From sequence record MW373745.1: DNA of 64,000 nucleotides, one strand, 5' to 3'. How positions within the stretch are numbered: position 1 is the stretch's first letter; the number at the start of each line of letters is the position of its first letter. This document shows positions 1-64,000 of this stretch, piece by piece. The notes under the pieces are model-generated. The model worked only from the letters and a program-made list of their open reading frames with translations, made no database searches and was not told the origin of the DNA. The position numbers and the translations under genes are program-made.

Positions 1-11
1 ACTAAAAACTT

Positions 12-530
12 AAGCATTTTTTATACTTTTTAATATTAGTTTAAGCTTTGCTTTAAGTTTTAAGCATATACTAGGATATAATACTATAGTATATACTACT
101 AAAAACCTTAGCATTTTTTATACTTTTTAATATTGTTTTAAGTTTTAAATCTAAACTAAAAATTTTGGTTTTAAAAACTCGAAAAAACTTTTTTAAAAAG
201 CTTTATATTATAATATATCATATTAAAGAGTAAAAATTTTTTTTAAAAAAATTTCAAGGACTTGGAATCCCACATTAAAATTCAAAACAAAACTTAAAGC
301 AAAGCTTAAACTAATATTAAAAAGTATAAAAAATGCTTGGGTTTTTAATAGTATATAACAATGCTATATATCCTAGCATATGCTTAAAACTCTTAAACTA
401 ATATTAAAAAGTATAAAAAATGCTTGGGTTTTTAATAGTATATAACAATGCTATATATCCTAGCATATGCTTAAAACTTAAAGCAATATTAAAAAGTATA
501 AAAAATGCTTGGCTTTTTAATAGTATATAA
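12..530. repeat. AT-rich repeat array; core AATATTAAAAAGTATAAAAAATGCTT, with copies in both orientations
   Basis: Forward cores start at 313, 400 and 485; reverse-complement cores lie at 12-37 and about 109-134; 12-60 is a perfect 49-bp inverted copy of 290-338. Confidence 0.95.
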
Positions 531-590
531 CAATGACTACATTTCAGTTAAAATTCAGTTATATTTTAATATAATACCGTAAGTATAAAA

Positions 591-598
591 AATAAATA
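591..598 (+). promoter_or_regulatory. Representative late-promoter motif AATAAATA (T4 TATAAATA-like)
   Basis: Also at 3009, 3895, 16756, 24813, 38415, 43524, 48868, 51865, 52662 and 54122 (+), and 24801, 36600, 37525 and 38381 (-), mostly before structural genes. Confidence 0.7.
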
Positions 599-629
599 CT
601 TGAATATAATATAACAAGCAAGGAAATAT

Positions 630-47734: not shown

Positions 47735-48493
47735 ATGGCTGATATTATTCAAAATAAAATGAATCAAGTGATGGGTGATTTAGCTCGCCCCACTAAGTTT
47801 AAATGTCAAATATTTCCACCTAAAGAAATTAAGTGTGAATTAAGTATTTTAAATGAAGGAGCTTCTGCAACATCCAGTACTTCTGAAATAGGACAATATT
47901 TAGACTATTTTTGTCACGCTACAAGTTTTCCGGGATTGACTGTAGAAACAATAGATTTTAAATATAGAGGTAGAACCCTACCAGTCAAATCAGTACAAAC
48001 TTATCAACAAAAATGGACAGCAACTTTTTATAATGATGAAAAACACGCAGTTAGAAAGTTATTTTTAGATTGGATGACTTATGATCAAGCTCACCAATTT
48101 GAGGATAAAACTAAAGGTAATTTTGAAGGTATATTACCAAGCATTTCTATATATCAATTAGATTTTGAAATGTCTAAAGATTGTGTTGTGTATACTATGA
48201 TGAATGTATTTCCAACAAATGTAGGAGAAATTTCAGTTCAATACGACGGGTTAAATCAAATTGAAACTTTTACAGTTGAGTTTGCATATACTCATTTTGA
48301 AATTAATACAATTTCTAGGGAAGGGTTAACTAGTTCTGAAGTCACGAGTTTGATCAAGAATACTATACAGAATACTATTAATAGTGTTACCAATACTTTA
48401 AAGGATGCTGTTTTTGGCGCTTTGGACGACCTAGTTTCACCTGTATTGGATTCTGTTTCAGATTCATTTGAAAATTTTATAAGTACAAAATAA
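47735..48493 (+). CDS. Tail tube family protein (gp54/gp19-like)
   Basis: DLARPTKF, FPG..., W.ATFYND and FPTNVGE...FTVEFAY motifs. Confidence 0.75.
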   Translation: MADIIQNKMNQVMGDLARPTKFKCQIFPPKEIKCELSILNEGASATSSTSEIGQYLDYFCHATSFPGLTVETIDFKYRGRTLPVKSVQTYQQKWTATFYNDEKHAVRKLFLDWMTYDQAHQFEDKTKGNFEGILPSISIYQLDFEMSKDCVVYTMMNVFPTNVGEISVQYDGLNQIETFTVEFAYTHFEINTISREGLTSSEVTSLIKNTIQNTINSVTNTLKDAVFGALDDLVSPVLDSVSDSFENFISTK

Positions 48494-48595
48494 GGTTTTT
48501 TATTATATAATATATTTTTGATCTTTTTAAATTGTGTTGTTACGAACTTTTTTTGAGTTTTTACAGTTTATACTATAGTATTAAATCTAAAACTT

Positions 48596-48695
48596 NNNNN
48601 NNNNNNNNNNNNNNNNNNNNNNNNNNNNNNNNNNNNNNNNNNNNNNNNNNNNNNNNNNNNNNNNNNNNNNNNNNNNNNNNNNNNNNNNNNNNNNN
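48596..48695. other. Assembly gap (100 N) within a repeat region
   Basis: Run of N. Confidence 0.99.
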
Positions 48696-48805
48696 AAAGC
48701 AATATTAAAAAGTATAAAAAATGCTTGAGTTTTTACAGTTTATACTATAGTATTAAAGCTTAAAGCAATATTAAAAAGTATAAAAAATGCTTGGGTTTTT
48801 TTTAA
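48696..48805 (+). repeat. Repeat array, same core as 12-530
   Basis: Cores at 48701 and 48777. Confidence 0.9.
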
Positions 48806-48882
48806 TTTTCACCATAATATATGTAATTTAAGTTTACTTTAAGTTTAAATATGCAAGACTAAAGCTTAATAAATACTTAAAA

Positions 48883-49308
48883 ATGAAGTTCAAACAAGGC
48901 ATTTATATACCAAAAAACCCAGAGAAATATATACATAGTTATACAAAAATGAATGAACACACTGAATATCCTGTTTATAGGAGTTCTTGGGAGCTTAGTT
49001 TCTTCAAATTTTGTGATTATTCACCCTCTATTACTAAATGGTCTTCTGAGCCAGTCGGTATAAAGTACTTTAATCCCGTCAAAAAACGACAATCCACATA
49101 TTATCCCGATGCTATGATTATTCGTAACGATATAACATTTTTAATAGAGATTAAGCCTAAATCTCAATTACCAGGTTCTAACTCAAAATCCAGTTATGAT
49201 AAACTTTCAGCGGCAGTTAACGAAGCCAAGTATAATGCCGCAAAATCTTATTGTGAAGCAAACAATATGCAATTCATAATCTTAAGTGATTCTTTCTTTA
49301 AATCTTGA
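48883..49308 (+). CDS. Head completion protein gp4 (TnsA-like endonuclease fold)
   Basis: PKNPEKY, YRSSWE, WSSEP, YYPD and IEIKP motifs. Confidence 0.9.
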   Translation: MKFKQGIYIPKNPEKYIHSYTKMNEHTEYPVYRSSWELSFFKFCDYSPSITKWSSEPVGIKYFNPVKKRQSTYYPDAMIIRNDITFLIEIKPKSQLPGSNSKSSYDKLSAAVNEAKYNAAKSYCEANNMQFIILSDSFFKS

Positions 49309-49489
49309 TTTTAAAGTTTTAAGCTTTTTTTGGTTTTAAAACTTAAGTTTAGTATTCAAAAATTTTTGACCTTTTTAATATAATATATTATAATATATTA
49401 TAATATAAAAACTTTTTTCAAAAATTTTAGTAGTTTTACAGTTGTTTAGAATTTGTTTTAAAATCTAAACTAAAGTTTCAGTTTAAAAC

Positions 49490-49775
49490 TTAAAGCAATA
49501 TTAAAAAGTATAAAAAATGCTTGGCTTTTTAGTAGTATATACTATAGTATAATGCTTAAAGCTTAAAGCAATATTAAAAAGTATAAAAAATGCTTGGCTT
49601 TTTAGTAGTATATACTATAGTATATGCTTAAAGCTTAAAGCTTAAAGCAATATTAAAAAGTATAAAAAATGCTTGGCTTTTTAGTAGTATATACTATAGT
49701 ATAATGCTTAAATCTTAAACTAATATTAAAAAGTATAAAAAATGCTTGGCTTTTTAGTAGTATATACTATAGTAT
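49490..49775 (+). repeat. Tandem repeat array (73-79 bp units)
   Basis: Cores at 49497, 49570, 49649 and 49722; each unit holds palindrome TAGTATATACTA and a variable number of CTTAAAG. Confidence 0.95.
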
Positions 49776-49875
49776 NNNNNNNNNNNNNNNNNNNNNNNNN
49801 NNNNNNNNNNNNNNNNNNNNNNNNNNNNNNNNNNNNNNNNNNNNNNNNNNNNNNNNNNNNNNNNNNNNNNNNNNN
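49776..49875. other. Assembly gap (100 N)
   Basis: Run of N. Confidence 0.99.
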
Positions 49876-49983
49876 CTTTTTGTTAGATCAACACAGAAGA
49901 CTGCAAATATTTAAACCATTCTAATAAATTTAAGAATTTTTTAAGCTTATATATTATATAATATACCAATTGAAAGGAAAATA

Positions 49984-51728: not shown

Positions 51729-51899
51729 TTTTATGTATATAAGCAATATCATAAATTACACGAAGTGTTAAAATTGATATTTGCTTCGATTCTGCCAATA
51801 CTAAATACTACTAACACTACTAACACTACAAAAAATAAGCTTAAAACAAAATTAAACCGATTTTAATAAATATAAAAAAATTCAAAGAAAGGTACCTAA

Positions 51900-52625: not shown

Positions 52626-52695
52626 GTTCAACTAACAAGCTCAGTTAAAATTCAGTTAAAAAATAAATATATAAAAAATTAAAAGGTTAAAAACA

Positions 52696-61012: not shown

Positions 61013-62035
61013 ATGTTGAACTTAAAAGATTTAAATCACAAATATATTGATGCTTTATATCGATGTTTGAATGGCACTGAAAATACACCAAACAAATACC
61101 ACTTAGAACCGAACGTTGGTATACACACCGAAATGGTTATGGCCAAAGTCAACGAATTATATAAAGATGATCCTGATTATAAAGTATTAATATTAGGAGC
61201 AGCTTTACACGATATTGGTAAAATAATAACTAGAACACCATCTAAAAATAACCCAGAAAAAATACATTTTTTAAATCACGAAAATGCTGGTGTGTTCTTT
61301 GCATTAGATGTTTTACACGATTTGGATTTAAATCTAACCAAACAAGAAATAATAGATATAATTAAAATAGTAGCCCATCACGACATTTATAAATTCGATT
61401 TAGAAACACTTAAAAAACGTTATGTTTATAGAGATTTAAAATTATTATCCAAGTTTTCAGTTGCTGATGCTTTAGGTAGAATCACTGAAGTTCCAAAAGA
61501 ACTTCCCGATTTAAATATTGAAGCTTATGATAGATCTAATGTTGCCAATGAACCAGTTTTAGAAGTATTAGTAGGATTACCAGGTTCTGGTAAATCAACT
61601 TATGTTTATATGAATGATAAAGCAGCTATATCAAGAGACGATATTTTAATGAGATACGGTTTTAAAAAATACAATCAAGTTGAATATTCAGATATTTGGA
61701 GAAACTTAACAGATTCTGATCAAAAAGAAATCGATTCTTTATTTAATGATAAGTTTTTAAGAGCACTTCAAAAGAATCAAAATATTTTAATAGATAAAAC
61801 GAATACTTCGATTAAATCGAGGCGTAGATTATTTGCTACTTCGAGCTTGGTTAGAAATTATCATAAGAAAGCAGTAGTATTTTTAACACCATATACAATG
61901 ATATTAAATAGACTTGAAAAAAGAAATGCTACAGGTAAAATAATTAATAAAAGTGTTGTGGATGCTATGATGAAATCTTTTGTAATACCTACTTATGAAG
62001 AGTTCGATTCAATAGAGTTTAGACTTTGGTTCTAA
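61013..62035 (+). CDS. HD-domain phosphohydrolase fused to polynucleotide kinase
   Basis: HTEMV, LHDIGK, HH and AD motifs; VGLPGSGKST, ISRD and IDKTN. Confidence 0.82.
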   Translation: MLNLKDLNHKYIDALYRCLNGTENTPNKYHLEPNVGIHTEMVMAKVNELYKDDPDYKVLILGAALHDIGKIITRTPSKNNPEKIHFLNHENAGVFFALDVLHDLDLNLTKQEIIDIIKIVAHHDIYKFDLETLKKRYVYRDLKLLSKFSVADALGRITEVPKELPDLNIEAYDRSNVANEPVLEVLVGLPGSGKSTYVYMNDKAAISRDDILMRYGFKKYNQVEYSDIWRNLTDSDQKEIDSLFNDKFLRALQKNQNILIDKTNTSIKSRRRLFATSSLVRNYHKKAVVFLTPYTMILNRLEKRNATGKIINKSVVDAMMKSFVIPTYEEFDSIEFRLWF

Positions 62036-62961: not shown

Positions 62962-63504
62962 ATGAAAATAGGATTTACAGGAGTTTCAGGTTCTGGAAAG
63001 ACGACTATAGCCAAATTATTAAAAGAACGATATAATTTGGATATTATTCCAGGGCCTGGAAGAAAATTAAAAGAATTGGGTTTTAATATAAATGAAGATG
63101 GTGATATGGAAACTCAAAAAGCAGCTTTGCAAATTCATATAGAAGATCTTAACAAAGATGGTATATACGAAAGAACAATATTAGATGCTGTAGTTTATAC
63201 TAAGTATTTAGTAGAGATTAAAAAATCAATACCTGATGTATTTTTAGATTTAGCTGAAATAGTTTCTATTGAATTAATGAAAAAATATGATATAGTTTTT
63301 TATATTAAACCAGAATTTGATTTAGTTCCGGATGGTGTCAGATCTACTGATTTAGAATTTAGAAATATTTGTAGTAATTACTACGATTACTATATAGATA
63401 CCTACGGTATTAATGTAGTTAATTTAAGTGGTTCTGTAGACGAAAGATTTAAAGCAGCTGTCAAAATTATCGACAAAAGATTTGAAAATTTAAGGAACTT
63501 TTAA
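62962..63504 (+). CDS. P-loop nucleotide kinase (AAA_28-like), paralog of 11487-12020
   Basis: IGFTGVSGSGKTT, ERTILD and DGVRS motifs. Confidence 0.72.
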   Translation: MKIGFTGVSGSGKTTIAKLLKERYNLDIIPGPGRKLKELGFNINEDGDMETQKAALQIHIEDLNKDGIYERTILDAVVYTKYLVEIKKSIPDVFLDLAEIVSIELMKKYDIVFYIKPEFDLVPDGVRSTDLEFRNICSNYYDYYIDTYGINVVNLSGSVDERFKAAVKIIDKRFENLRNF

Positions 63505-63522
63505 GGATACTTAGTATATAAT
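63499..63522 (+). promoter_or_regulatory. TTTAAG-N11-TATAAT promoter not followed by an ORF
   Basis: TTTTAAG GATACTTAGTA TATAAT. Confidence 0.65.
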
Positions 63523-63529
63523 TATAAAT

Positions 63530-64000
63530 ATAAATAAATTAGATCTTTTAAATATCATTGTTAAACAGATTTAGAATATAACCAAAATTGTGAGCATTTC
63601 GGATTTCCTGACAGAGAAAATCATCATAGTGTGCTCCTTTTTCTTTAGATTGCAATGTAACTTAATTGAAAGATTAAAAAATTTAAAAAGTTTAAAAATC
63701 TGAACAGAGAGATGCTCACAATTTTGGTTATATTTTAGTTTTAAATTCTAAACTTAGAATGTTAGAACTATAAAGACTTTTATGTGCAGAACATCATACA
63801 TACTTCTTATTTAATCGGGAATTTGTTAGTATAAACTTAGCACACCGGAAGTCTTTATAGTTCTAATCAATGTTCAGAATAGTCTCTACCTTGCTAAGAC
63901 ATATGTCGATAAGCGAACTGTGGATACTTCTATAATATTTTTATGAAGGACTGGGAGGTAGAACACTACCACAAACTCAAGACATTCTTTAGAACTCGTA
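63530..64000 (+). ncRNA. Candidate structured non-coding RNA (may extend past the window)
   Basis: 29-bp stem 63572-63600/63709-63737 (2 G-U); 18-bp perfect stem 63762-63779/63849-63866; further helices to the window end; upstream promoter. Confidence 0.55.

What the first reader, a model, noticed from the sequence alone, without database searches (positions are those of the whole stretch)
63499..64000. Promoter-driven, ORF-free, multi-stem RNA candidate at the right end
Seen: a full TTTAAG-N11-TATAAT promoter (63499-63522), the motif that precedes protein genes elsewhere, is followed by about 470 nt with no plus-strand ORF. The region holds consecutive long helices: a 29-bp stem 63572-63600/63709-63737 whose two non-Watson-Crick positions are G-U on the plus strand (A-C on the minus); an 18-bp perfect stem 63762-63779/63849-63866 extended by GUGC/GCAC; and a third domain in which UCUACCU (63885) can pair with AGGUAGA (63956), while GGUAG can instead pair with CUACC (63966). 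Inference: a phage-encoded structured ncRNA, possibly with a conformational switch. I do not recognise it as a known family.
Basis: partly seen in the sequence, partly recalled or inferred. Interest (0 to 1): 0.8.

Follow-up and report, generated by a model that had tools for sequence, protein, structure and literature searches.

The report
Conserved structured early RNA in Campylobacter phages
A gene-free stretch just upstream of the tail tube gene of Campylobacter phage CJLB-13 and all its close relatives starts with a normal early promoter and keeps a set of RNA helices intact through compensating mutations, so it most likely encodes a previously undescribed structured non-coding RNA whose job is still unknown.

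Summary
The window is Campylobacter phage CJLB-13 (Firehammervirus). The finding lies in a 678-nt gene-free region between an early P-loop kinase gene and the late tail tube gene, and it runs about 100-180 nt past the window end.

The promoter motif TTTAAG-N11-TATAAT precedes an RBS and ATG within 17-28 nt at 12 other places in the window. Only the copy at 63500 has no ORF behind it.

I collected 23 distinct versions of the region. The core helices P0, P1, P2 and a multi-helix domain D3 stay 98-100% paired. Five of their base pairs changed on both sides, and a sixth such pair lies in the 3' palindrome hairpin. Paired columns vary less than half as often as unpaired ones. Non-Watson-Crick states are G·U on the plus strand 22 times against 3 A·C, which points to a plus-strand RNA.

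Rfam gives no match, there is no second copy, and no homologue exists outside the genus.

New context: in 9 of the 23 versions, IS200/IS605-type 3' ends (the TnpB guide-RNA region) sit in the P1 loop or ahead of P0, never inside a helix. The core itself has no IS similarity.

No transcript was seen, so function is unknown. The proposed conformational switch and the 3' terminator are not well supported.

The parts
63500..63522 (+). Host sigma-70-type early promoter, TTTAAG-N11-TATAAT. Its -35 element overlaps the stop codon of the upstream AAA_28 kinase gene.
   Evidence: Exact motif match. The same motif lies 17-28 nt before RBS+ATG of 12 ORFs in the window. It is conserved in 22 of 23 versions; CC_R7 has a different promoter-like sequence at the same place. 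No such motif points into the region from the minus strand.
63523..63538 (+). AT-rich leader of (TATAAA)/(TAAAAA) repeats, variable in length. In 5 of the 23 distinct versions (L096, L099, L103, L106, plus a different, tandem-repeat-derived upstream sequence in CC_R7) extra DNA lies here.
   Evidence: Length varies among relatives. An IS-derived module ending in GTTTAGTTGG is inserted just before TAAATTAGATC.
63540..63573 (+). P0 hairpin: UAGAUCU 63540-63546 pairs with AGAUUUA 63567-63573.
   Evidence: 7 pairs, 100% paired in 23 sequences. Two pairs vary only to G·U or U·G.
63574..63600 (+). P1 5' arm of the 27-29 bp helix.
   Evidence: Inverted repeat I1. 27 pairs, 99.5% paired. 63581-63728 changes A-U > G·U > G-C, and four further pairs vary only to G·U.
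63601..63708 (+). P1 apical region. It holds the hairpin GAUUU 63602-63606 / AAAUC 63618-63622 with the invariant loop motif ACAGAGA (63611), a variable AT-rich middle, and a second invariant ACAGAGA (63704). The insertion hotspot lies at about 63657/63658.
   Evidence: P1i is 100% paired. WX1, L098, IBB35 and CC_R7 carry 130-290 nt of ISCaje1/ISCaje3 3' ends here.
63709..63735 (+). P1 3' arm.
63736..63760 (+). Linker with the conserved AAAUUCUAA. The long-range pairing I first proposed with UUAGAACU 63989-63996 is not conserved.
   Evidence: Helix 4 is broken in 3 sequences. The local hairpin is lost in CPt10-type sequences.
63761..63867 (+). P2 domain. It comprises a 20-bp helix 63761-63780 / 63848-63867, then UGUGC/GCACA 63783-63787 / 63840-63844, then the apical stems 63796-63799 / 63829-63832 and 63802-63803 / 63825-63826 around a variable loop.
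   Evidence: Inverted repeat I2. All four helices are 100% paired in 23 sequences. 63771-63857 changes U-A > C-G, and 63798-63830 changes A-U > G·U > G-C. Fold z = -6.8.
63876..63988 (+). D3 multi-helix domain.
- Closing helix: AGAAU.GUCU / AGACAUUCU.
- Arm UUGCU/AGCGA (63891-95 / 63912-16), with a variable-length GAC...GUC tip.
- Helix UGUGG/CCACA (63919-23 / 63969-73).
- Hairpin 63927-63948.
- Possible pseudoknot CUACC 63886-90 with GGUAG 63957-61.
   Evidence: 63921-63971 (U-A > C-G) and 63922-63970 (G-C > U-A) change together in 7 of 23 sequences. The pseudoknot pairs vary only to G·U. The plus strand folds better than the minus, -28.9 against -25.9 kcal/mol.
63989..64000 (+). Start of the 3' part, which runs off the window. 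Beyond the window, in record coordinates: a variable spacer; a hairpin at about 64021-64052; two ACACTATAGTGT palindromes at 64059-64090 that together form a 12-bp terminator-like hairpin with a U-rich tail; a late-promoter-like ATAAATA at 64146-64152; and the tail tube ATG at 64183.
   Evidence: These 3' helices are not well conserved: 8 G·U against 8 A·C states, and one palindrome copy is missing in 3 versions.

Best explanation
The region encodes a structured non-coding RNA of roughly 460-570 nt that is specific to the genus Firehammervirus.

Proposed course of events:
- Host RNA polymerase transcribes it early in infection from a consensus sigma-70-type promoter at 63500-63522.
- The transcript folds into a 5' hairpin (P0), a 27-bp helix (P1), a 20+5-bp helix with a structured tip (P2), and a multi-helix and possibly pseudoknotted domain (D3).
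- The P1 loop carries two invariant ACAGAGA motifs and tolerates large insertions.
- The RNA is made as a product in its own right. The tail tube gene downstream has its own late-type ATAAATA promoter.

Inferred, not shown:
- It acts in trans as a stable protein-binding or scaffold RNA during early infection.
- Its long perfect helices are substrates for host RNase III, or protect the RNA from decay.

What is shown: conservation of the pairing, the strand bias, the promoter context, and the absence of coding potential.

What is inferred: transcription itself, the 3' end, and the mode of action.
For: 1. Promoter. The motif is identical to the one in front of 12 early-type genes, and here alone it has no ORF behind it. 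CC_R7 has a different upstream context but still a promoter-like sequence at the same spot.

2. Pairing in 23 distinct versions.
- Across the whole model (134 pairs), 98.4% of cells are paired, against 40-45% when the partners are slid.
- 6 pairs and 21 cells changed on both sides, against 3.0 and 5.4 in shuffles and 0-2 pairs when slid. Five of the six lie in P1, P2 and D3, and the sixth lies in the 3' palindrome hairpin.
- The covariation score is 0.054 against 0.042, reached by 0 of 500 shuffles.

3. Selection on the helices.
- In 63539-63996, 15% of paired columns vary (32/207) against 39% of unpaired columns (91/235); Fisher 4e-8.
- In the D2-D4 alignment, unpaired columns diverge about as fast as third codon positions of the flanking genes.

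4. Strand. The core helices show 22 G·U states against 3 A·C states, binomial p = 1.6e-4. D3 folds better on the plus strand. No minus-strand promoter points into the region.

5. Indels and insertions of up to 290 nt occur only in loops or ahead of P0, never inside a helix. Hairpin tips are replaced by different sequences that still pair.

6. Not coding. Small ORFs are not conserved.

7. The tail tube gene shares an ATAAATA motif, about 25-37 nt before the ATG, with other structural genes. It therefore does not need this promoter.
Against: - No RNA data of any kind were available. Transcription is inferred from a motif.
- All 23 sequences come from one genus with about 10% neutral divergence. 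Most pairs never vary, and several of the 'events' may be single ancestral changes spread by recombination.
- Template-switch mutation or gene conversion between inverted repeats can also produce complementary double changes at the DNA level.
- Perfect helices of 27 and 20 bp are unusual for folded functional RNAs and typical of DNA inverted repeats.
- The structure was partly chosen by RNAalifold on the plus strand, which favours G·U. However, P1 and P2 were defined by strand-neutral repeat finding, and P0/P1/P2 alone show about 15 G·U against 1 A·C.
- The 3' hairpins (D4, terminator) and the long-range helix are not conserved, so the 3' end is undefined.
- In four distinct versions (five loci) an IS remnant separates the promoter from the RNA by 200-280 nt.
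Confidence: 0.6

Rival explanations
1. It is a cis-acting leader or insulator of the tail tube gene. The structured transcript from the early promoter serves only to stop, pause or condition read-through into the late tail tube gene, or to set that mRNA's stability and translation. It would have no trans function. The alternative pairings in D3 would act as the switch.
For: - It lies directly upstream of and co-oriented with the tail tube gene.
- A 12-bp hairpin with a U-rich tail lies 90 nt before the ATG (-16 kcal/mol).
- The whole-region fold pairs UUAAACCAU with AUGGUUUAA beside the Shine-Dalgarno sequence. The upstream arm lies before the late promoter motif, so the hairpin could form only in read-through transcripts.
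- The competing pairings UCUACCU/AGGUAGA, GGUAG/CUACC and UGUGG/CCACA all exist.
Against: - The terminator hairpin is the least conserved part. One palindrome copy is deleted in CP220, CJLB-14 and L106, there are A·C mismatches in 4-5 others, and G·U and A·C states are equal at 8:8.
- The gene has its own late-type promoter motif.
- Relatives outside the genus, and Fletchervirus, have only 12-150 nt before the tail tube gene, so no such leader is needed.
- A pure insulator would not need a consensus promoter feeding into it.
Confidence: 0.15
2. It is a DNA-level element. The inverted repeats would work as DNA, for example as cruciforms or single-strand hairpins for a replication origin, a recombination site, or binding sites for a phage protein. 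Alternatively P1 and P2 are fixed remnants of miniature inverted-repeat transposable elements.
For: - The long, perfect, almost invariant arms resemble MITE terminal repeats: P1 is a 26-29 bp repeat around 108 bp.
- A TTAG direct repeat flanks the 26-bp version of P1 (read).
- The genomes are full of IS200/IS605 elements that move as single-stranded DNA. Their remnants accumulate in exactly this region.
- A promoter next to an AT-rich stretch recalls the T4 R-loop origins oriF and oriG (my own knowledge).
- The palindromes ACACTATAGTGT share their core with ATACTATAGTAT of the genome's large repeat regions, which occurs 7 times against 0.09 expected.
Against: - The core is single-copy in every genome. 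There is 1 place per record and no second hit in the window or in other loci.
- It has no similarity to ISCaje ends, and no version with an empty site is known.
- The strand bias of G·U over A·C, 22:3, is not expected for duplex DNA or for protein sites.
- The best covariation is in a short 5-bp helix 45 nt apart inside a multi-helix domain, which is not a typical DNA repeat.
- There is no GC-skew turn at the locus within record positions 1-72000.
- A scan of 185,579 bacterial genomes with the P1 arm found only two chance hits.
Confidence: 0.13
3. It is a non-functional relic. The region would be decaying leftover DNA, such as old mobile-element debris or a dead gene, in the largest dispensable gap of this genome module. 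The apparent conservation would only reflect how closely related the phages are.
For: - All the genomes are closely related; the tail tube protein is 99.5-100% identical.
- The region tolerates many indels and IS-derived insertions.
Against: - Unpaired columns evolve at about the synonymous rate while paired columns are several-fold slower.
- Compensatory and wobble-only changes occur in helices.
- Insertions avoid helices.
- The promoter is retained in all versions.
Confidence: 0.07

Closest known systems
Large structured non-coding RNAs of phages and prophages with unknown function (GOLLD, ROOL)
   Same: Several hundred nucleotides long, multi-domain, phage-borne, promoter-driven, ORF-free, with peripheral loops that vary in length.
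   Different: No covariance-model match even at E up to 5-10. This RNA is restricted to one genus of virulent Campylobacter phages. It has unusually long perfect helices and is not next to tRNA genes.
TnpB omega-RNA (reRNA) and the right end of IS200/IS605 elements (ISCaje1, ISCaje3)
   Same: Structured RNA-coding DNA in the same genomes. In 8 of the 23 distinct versions such modules sit inside this transcription unit, in the sense orientation: in the P1 loop (WX1, L098, IBB35, CC_R7) or ahead of P0 (L096, L099, L103, L106). They share the exact right boundary ...GTTTAGTTGG with native ISCaje3 copies.
   Different: The core in this window has no sequence similarity to any ISCaje end. It has no adjacent tnpB and is single-copy.
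MITE / palindrome-associated transposable elements
   Same: P1 looks like a 166-bp unit with 26-29 bp terminal inverted repeats and a possible TTAG flank duplication.
   Different: It is single-copy, fixed in all genomes, and no empty site is known. Its changes keep RNA-type wobble pairing on one strand.
RNase III processing hairpins of phage early transcripts (T7 R1-R5, lambda N leader)
   Same: Long double-stranded helices in early transcripts made by host polymerase. Campylobacter has RNase III (my own knowledge).
   Different: Those sites lie between genes of a polycistronic mRNA and usually contain internal loops. Here there are no flanking cistrons on the transcript, and cleavage is untested.
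phi29 pRNA and HK022 put RNA (phage RNAs that act as RNA)
   Same: Promoter-proximal structured RNAs that work without being translated.
   Different: They are much smaller (about 120-174 nt and about 70 nt), with known partners (portal/ATPase, RNA polymerase). There is no sequence or structural match here, and T4-like packaging needs no RNA.

Membership tests
Any Rfam 15 family (including GOLLD, ROOL, OLE, HEARO, IS605-orfB-type motifs, group I/II introns, 6S, tmRNA, RNase P) | Covariance-model score at or above the family's gathering threshold | tested here: not met
   0 hits at gathering threshold over the window. At E up to 10 and 5 there were only noise hits, 10-25 bits against thresholds of 40-113, on 63300-64000 and on the complete region of F379, WX1 and CC_R7. 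ARAGORN found no tRNA or tmRNA.
MITE / IS200-IS605-derived miniature element | Multiple copies per genome | tested here: not met
   blastn finds one place per phage record. nhmmer finds no second copy in the window or in any of the loci then held.
MITE / IS200-IS605-derived miniature element | Sequence similarity to the ends of a resident IS | tested here: not met
   The core against the ISCaje1 and ISCaje3 loci gives only 12-21 nt AT-rich word hits, E >= 0.13. A profile of the ISCaje3 right end scores 4.7 bits. The feature is met only by the extra inserts of relatives.
MITE / IS200-IS605-derived miniature element | Terminal inverted repeats with a target-site duplication | tested here: inconclusive
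   The inverted repeats are present. A 4-nt TTAG lies on both flanks of the 26-bp version of P1 (read). A 4-mer match in 27% GC DNA is weak evidence, and the same bases can be read as a G·U pair. P2 has no flank repeat.
TnpB omega-RNA | Encoded across the 3' end of tnpB and the transposon right end, followed by a guide | tested here: not met
   No tnpB is adjacent; the flanking genes are an AAA_28 kinase and the tail tube gene. There is no similarity to the right ends.
Sigma-70-type promoter of Campylobacter/phage early genes | TTTAAG-N11-TATAAT placed as in front of known genes | tested here: met
   Exact match at 63500-63522. 12 of 15 exact matches in the window precede RBS+ATG by 17-28 nt. 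Promoter activity itself is not testable here.
Intrinsic terminator | Stable hairpin followed by a U tract, conserved among relatives | tested here: inconclusive
   Present in this phage: 12 bp, -16 kcal/mol, tail CGUAUUUUAAUUUU. One arm is deleted in 3 of 23 versions and mismatched in 4-5 others. There is one compensatory pair, in WX1.
Structured RNA under selection (generic test) | Compensatory base changes above controls, and strand-specific wobble pairs | tested here: met
   for covariation against shuffles and slid partners. for G·U 22 against A·C 3 in core helices. Power is limited by the low divergence.
Riboswitch-like conformational switch | Two mutually exclusive conserved pairings, both supported by covariation | tested here: inconclusive
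   UGUGG/CCACA has two compensatory pairs. GGUAG/CUACC and UCUACCU/AGGUAGA vary only to wobble pairs, and the former loses a pair in the 7 sequences carrying CAGCA. No ligand or partner is known.
T4-type R-loop replication origin | Promoter plus downstream unwinding element at a site of replication initiation | not testable with these tools
   Only indirect evidence: there is no GC-skew inflection at the locus within record positions 1-72000.

The most novel reading that the evidence does not exclude
This is a new class of large, ornate early phage RNA. Its P1 loop and 5' leader would serve as a built-in expression platform for stand-alone TnpB guide-RNA (omega-RNA) modules. Some Firehammerviruses would then use the host-driven early promoter to arm transposon-derived RNA-guided nucleases encoded elsewhere in the genome, for example against competing phages. 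The conserved core would have its own trans-acting role in host takeover.
Probability: 0.1. Interest if true: 0.85.

Novelty: new variant of a known kind. Interest (0 to 1): 0.6.

Why it matters
Firehammerviruses (the CP220/CP21 group) are leading candidates for biocontrol of Campylobacter in poultry. About half of their genes, and all of their regulation, remain uncharacterised.

This would be their first non-coding RNA: a conserved, early, highly structured RNA found in every genome of the genus. Only a few large phage RNAs have evidence of selection on structure, and this would be one of them.

It gives a concrete, mutable target. Helix-breaking mutations can be compared with compensating ones to ask what large structured RNAs do for a virulent phage.

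The repeated capture of TnpB guide-RNA modules inside the same transcription unit is a separate lead. It bears on how RNA-guided transposon nucleases behave in phage genomes.

Tried and rejected
- Known RNA family: rejected. Rfam at gathering and permissive thresholds, on the window and on full-length relatives, gave nothing. No tRNA or tmRNA.
- Hidden small gene: rejected. The 37-aa and 21-aa ORFs are not conserved and lack an RBS.
- Homologues outside the genus: none found.
  - Tail-tube-anchored searches of IMG/VR and metagenomes gave 39 and 31 loci.
  - Upstream gaps there are mostly 12-150 nt, with no profile hit.
  - The closest outsider, with 81% tail tube identity, has tRNA genes upstream instead.
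  - Fletchervirus has a second tail tube gene there.
- Repeated element or paralogue: rejected.
- IS or MITE origin of the core: no similarity. A bacterial genome scan with the P1 arm gave 2 chance hits.
- The large CP21-type repeat regions (core AAACTTAAAGCAA): these lie elsewhere in the window, at 1-600 and 48.5-49.8 kb, not here.
- Long-range helix 63737-44 / 63989-96 and the RNAalifold helix CUAC/GUGG: dropped, because both are broken in divergent sequences.
- Single-column covariation listing: uninformative with so few lineages, since it gave many spurious pairs.
- Replication origin by GC skew: no signal.
- Literature: the CP220/CPt10 and CP21 genome papers do not mention promoters, intergenic regions or non-coding RNA. 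Searches found no description of this region.
- A covariance model was not built. The sequences are too similar for it to reach beyond what the profile HMM already searched.
Full report
WHERE WE ARE

The window is bases 1-64000 of Campylobacter phage CJLB-13 (MW373745.1, genus Firehammervirus, a T4-like 'group II' Campylobacter phage; 100% match).

The finding lies in a gene-free region of 678 nt. Upstream is a 180-aa P-loop protein at 62962-63504 (Pfam AAA_28). Downstream is the gp19-like tail tube gene, whose ATG is at record position 64183, 183 nt beyond the window end. I read the rest of the region from the public record (locus L001).

The same gap of 660-963 nt exists in all 11 sequenced Firehammerviruses and is unannotated there, or carries only doubtful small ORFs.

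CHECK OF THE OBSERVATION

- The 29-nt inverted repeat 63572-63600 / 63709-63737 is 27/29 complementary. Its two exceptions are G·U and U·G on the plus strand.
- The 18-nt repeat 63762-63779 / 63849-63866 is perfect, and a GUGC/GCAC extension follows.
- The three short complementary words of the third domain are in place.
- None of this is chance. The arm sequences occur nowhere else in the window, against 0.02 expected. The region folds 7.8 standard deviations better than shuffles.
- The promoter claim holds up well. TTTAAG-N11-TATAAT has 15 exact matches in the window. Twelve are followed within 17-28 nt by an AAGGAG-type ribosome binding site and the ATG of a real ORF, including the two genes just upstream at 61013 and 62144. 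Two lie inside genes on the opposite strand. The one at 63500 is the only gene-type copy with nothing to translate behind it.
- The motif equals the published Campylobacter sigma-70 consensus as I recall it (-35 TTTAAG, -10 TATAAT). That recollection is from my own knowledge and was not checked here.
- The small plus-strand ORFs (37 and 21 aa) lack ribosome binding sites and are not conserved.

MORE SEQUENCES

Searches anchored on the tail tube protein found no relative outside the genus with this region.

- In IMG/VR and in metagenomes the upstream gap is usually 12-150 nt, and profile searches found nothing.
- The nearest outsider has tRNA genes there.
- Fletchervirus has a second tail tube gene there.
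- Exact-protein look-ups found the locus on many further contigs. Most are phage contigs inside NCBI assemblies of Campylobacter isolates, and one comes from a Logan run.
- Together this gave 23 distinct versions of the region, 87.5-100% identical to CJLB-13, aligned as A5.

STRUCTURE AND SELECTION

I projected one structure onto A5. It came from the two inverted repeats, from RNAalifold on the first ten sequences, and from inspecting changes in divergent sequences.

Core helices:
- P0: 63540-46 / 63567-73.
- P1: 63574-63600 / 63709-63735.
- A hairpin inside the P1 loop: 63602-06 / 63618-22.
- P2: 63761-80 / 63848-67, followed by three shorter stems towards its tip.
- D3: a closing helix at 63876-85 / 63980-88, an arm at 63891-95 / 63912-16, a 5-bp helix at 63919-23 / 63969-73, a hairpin at 63927-48, and a possible pseudoknot at 63886-90 / 63957-61.

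Counts over all 134 pairs of the model:
- 98.4% of cells are standard pairs, against 40-45% when the partners are slid by 1-3 columns.
- Six pairs (21 cells) changed on both sides, against 3.0 pairs (5.4 cells) in shuffles and 0-2 pairs when slid.
- No shuffle of 500 reached the observed covariation score.

The double changes:
- P1 63581-63728: A-U to G-C, with a G·U intermediate in one sequence.
- P2 63771-63857: U-A to C-G.
- P2 tip 63798-63830: A-U, G·U, G-C.
- D3 63921-63971 (U-A to C-G) and 63922-63970 (G-C to U-A), always together, in 7 sequences.
- One pair in the 3' palindrome hairpin.

The tool's own caution applies. Related sequences can beat shuffles without any structure, and one inherited change counts many times.

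Three further observations do not depend on that statistic.

1. Variation avoids helices.
- In 63539-63996, 32 of 207 paired columns vary against 91 of 235 unpaired ones (Fisher 4e-8). The ten-sequence set gave the same result.
- Against CJLB-13, unpaired columns of the D2-D4 alignment differ by 5-18% in the divergent phages. That is similar to third codon positions of the flanking genes, at 6-12%. Paired columns differ by 0-7%.

2. Strand bias.
- In the core helices the non-Watson-Crick states are G·U or U·G 22 times and A·C or C·A 3 times (binomial p = 1.6e-4).
- A duplex-DNA or protein-site constraint has no reason to prefer one over the other. An RNA read from the plus strand does.
- P1 and P2 were defined by a strand-neutral repeat finder, so this is not only a by-product of how I chose the structure.

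3. Length changes respect the structure.
- Indels of 1-40 nt sit in loops or hairpin tips. The D3 arm tip varies from absent, to GAC-NNNN-GUC, to duplicated versions.
- Where the 5' arm of the downstream hairpin changes in IBB35, an inserted GAGCA restores pairing with UGCUC.
- Insertions of 130-290 nt occur only in the P1 loop or ahead of P0.

WHAT IS NOT SUPPORTED

- The long-range helix I first drew (63737-44 with 63989-96) is broken in three sequences.
- The hairpin at record positions 64021-64052 and the terminator-like hairpin made by the two ACACTATAGTGT palindromes (64059-64090) show as many A·C as G·U states, 8:8.
- One palindrome copy is missing in three versions.
- In CJLB-13 itself that hairpin is a good intrinsic terminator on paper: 12 bp, -16 kcal/mol, U-rich tail. 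Its poor conservation means the 3' end of the RNA is open.
UGUGG/CCACA overlaps GGUAG/CUACC by two bases, and UCUACCU/AGGUAGA would form a pseudoknot with UGUGG/CCACA. Only UGUGG/CCACA has compensatory support.

TRANSCRIPTION UNITS

Upstream of the tail tube ATG lies ATAAATA, at record positions 64146-64152. The same word sits about 25-37 nt before the start codons of the major capsid-size ORF, a 241-aa ORF, the gp2-like gene and PhoH. It resembles the T4 late promoter TATAAATA (my own knowledge).

The picture is therefore: early promoter, then structured RNA, then a variable hairpin, then late promoter, then tail tube gene. The only phage-type promoter that faces the region is on the plus strand.

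AN UNEXPECTED NEIGHBOUR: IS ENDS

The extra 130-290 nt in the P1 loop of WX1, IBB35, CC_R7 and L098 is not related to the core.

- It matches the last 127 nt of ISCaje1 and the last ~170 nt of ISCaje3, at 85-92% identity. These are TnpB-only IS200/IS605 elements of these phages: the 3' end of tnpB plus the right end (the elements were described in PMC2853527).
- By what is known of TnpB systems, that stretch encodes the guide-RNA (omega-RNA) scaffold. This is my own knowledge and was not tested here.
- All copies share the right boundary ...GTTTAGTTGG with the native elements.
- The helices I had seen covarying inside the insert belong to that scaffold.
- In L096/L100, L099, L103 and L106 the same right-end module is preceded by a decayed left end. 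That left end includes the start of an IS607-type tnpA, as judged by comparison with a solo copy at about 84.3 kb of CJLB-13. In these versions the module sits between the promoter and P0.
- So there are at least two insertion sites and several events, all in the sense orientation, all outside helices.
- The core of the window's own sequence has no similarity to these elements and is single-copy.
- I read this mainly as evidence that the P1 loop and the leader are free to vary while the helices are not. Whether the modules are expressed from the early promoter and used by TnpB is an open and more exciting possibility.

INTERPRETATION

Best explanation (0.6): a genus-specific, early-transcribed, structured non-coding RNA, acting as RNA.
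- The invariant loop motifs (two ACAGAGA words flanking the variable P1 apex) and the conserved single-stranded stretch CAAACUCAAGAC make a protein-binding or scaffold role the most natural guess.
- The 27-bp and 20-bp perfect helices would be RNase III substrates, or stabilisers.
- These mechanistic steps are inference.

Rivals:
- A cis-acting leader or insulator of the tail tube gene (0.15).
- A DNA-level inverted-repeat element, such as an origin, a recombination or binding site, or a fixed MITE (0.13).
- Functionless debris (0.07).

The evidence for and against each is given in the Rival explanations section.

NOVELTY AND LIMITS

- No Rfam family matches.
- The genome papers on CP220/CPt10 and CP21 do not mention the region.
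- It is a new family within a known kind, phage-encoded structured RNA.
- All evidence is comparative and comes from one shallow clade.
- The single decisive experiment is strand-specific transcript mapping in infected cells.

Noticed in passing
L007 (WX1) 515-808; L010 (IBB35) 521-691; L011 (CC_R7), same place; L098 about 800-1000; aligned at A5 columns 118-418: The loop of helix P1 carries the 3' ends of ISCaje1 (WX1 only) and ISCaje3. This is the tnpB 3' end plus the right end, i.e. the presumed TnpB guide-RNA scaffold. No tnpB gene is attached. The right boundary GTTTAGTTGG is the same as in native copies.
   Followed up: yes
L096/L100, L099, L103, L106: about 190-280 nt between the promoter and TTAGATC (locus positions about 650-856): This is a second insertion site. 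A decayed IS left end (IS607-like tnpA start) is fused to the same ISCaje3-type right end. It sits in the sense orientation and separates the early promoter from the conserved RNA. The module contains its own TATAAT about 25 nt before its right end.
   Followed up: partly
L111 (CJLB-13 record 83632-85201, reverse strand), locus 520-865: CJLB-13 itself has a solo copy of that miniature element outside the window: a left end, a broken MerR-like tnpA start, and an ISCaje3-type right end, with no tnpB. CC_R7 has 16 places matching the module.
   Followed up: partly
window 1-600 and 48480-49900: These are the large repeat regions of the CP21 type. Units are about 73-79 bp with the AAACTTAAAGCAA core and the palindrome ATACTATAGTAT, which occurs 7 times against 0.09 expected. 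N-runs (assembly gaps) lie at 48597-48715 and 49777-49876. The palindrome core ACTATAGT is shared with the two ACACTATAGTGT copies before the tail tube gene.
   Followed up: partly
window 51860-51899, 52650-52695; L001 4147-4153, 4800-4826, 5460-5500: An ATAAATA word lies about 25-37 nt before the ATG of structural or late-looking genes: a 241-aa ORF, the 444-aa capsid-size ORF, tail tube, gp2-like and PhoH. It is a candidate T4-like late promoter for this genus.
   Followed up: partly
L011 (CC_R7) 220-605: In CC_R7 the kinase gene is not upstream. Instead there are 4.2 tandem copies of a 92-nt unit directly before the RNA, each carrying a promoter-like TTTTTAAGG-N-TATATAAT.
   Followed up: no
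window 63611-63617 and 63704-63710: Two copies of ACAGAGA, within CUGA(A)CAGAGA, are invariant in all 23 versions. They flank the variable apex of P1. AGAGA could also pair with UCUCU at 63883-63887.
   Followed up: no
L001 4122-4130 and 4169-4177 (record 64121-64129 / 64168-64176): A perfect 9-bp pairing, UUAAACCAU/AUGGUUUAA, brackets the late-promoter motif and ends just after the tail tube Shine-Dalgarno sequence. It could form only in transcripts that start upstream of the late promoter.
   Followed up: no
L092, L096, L098-L106, L108, L109 (NCBI GCA_ assemblies): Firehammervirus contigs of 20-81 kb occur inside many public assemblies labelled as Campylobacter isolates. This is consistent with carrier-state cultures. 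They are an untapped source of phage diversity.
   Followed up: no
L055 1-1100: The closest tail tube relative outside the genus (81% identity, metagenome contig NFYZ01004825.1) has several tRNA-like genes on the opposite strand. It also has two copies of a TCGCAC...GTGCGA hairpin upstream of its tail tube gene.
   Followed up: no
window 61013-62035: The early gene two genes upstream (340 aa; the 258-aa ORF and the AAA_28 kinase gene lie between it and the RNA region) combines an HD domain with an AAA_33 kinase domain. This architecture recalls polynucleotide kinase/phosphatase-type RNA repair enzymes. It is annotated as 'poly A polymerase' in CP21.
   Followed up: no
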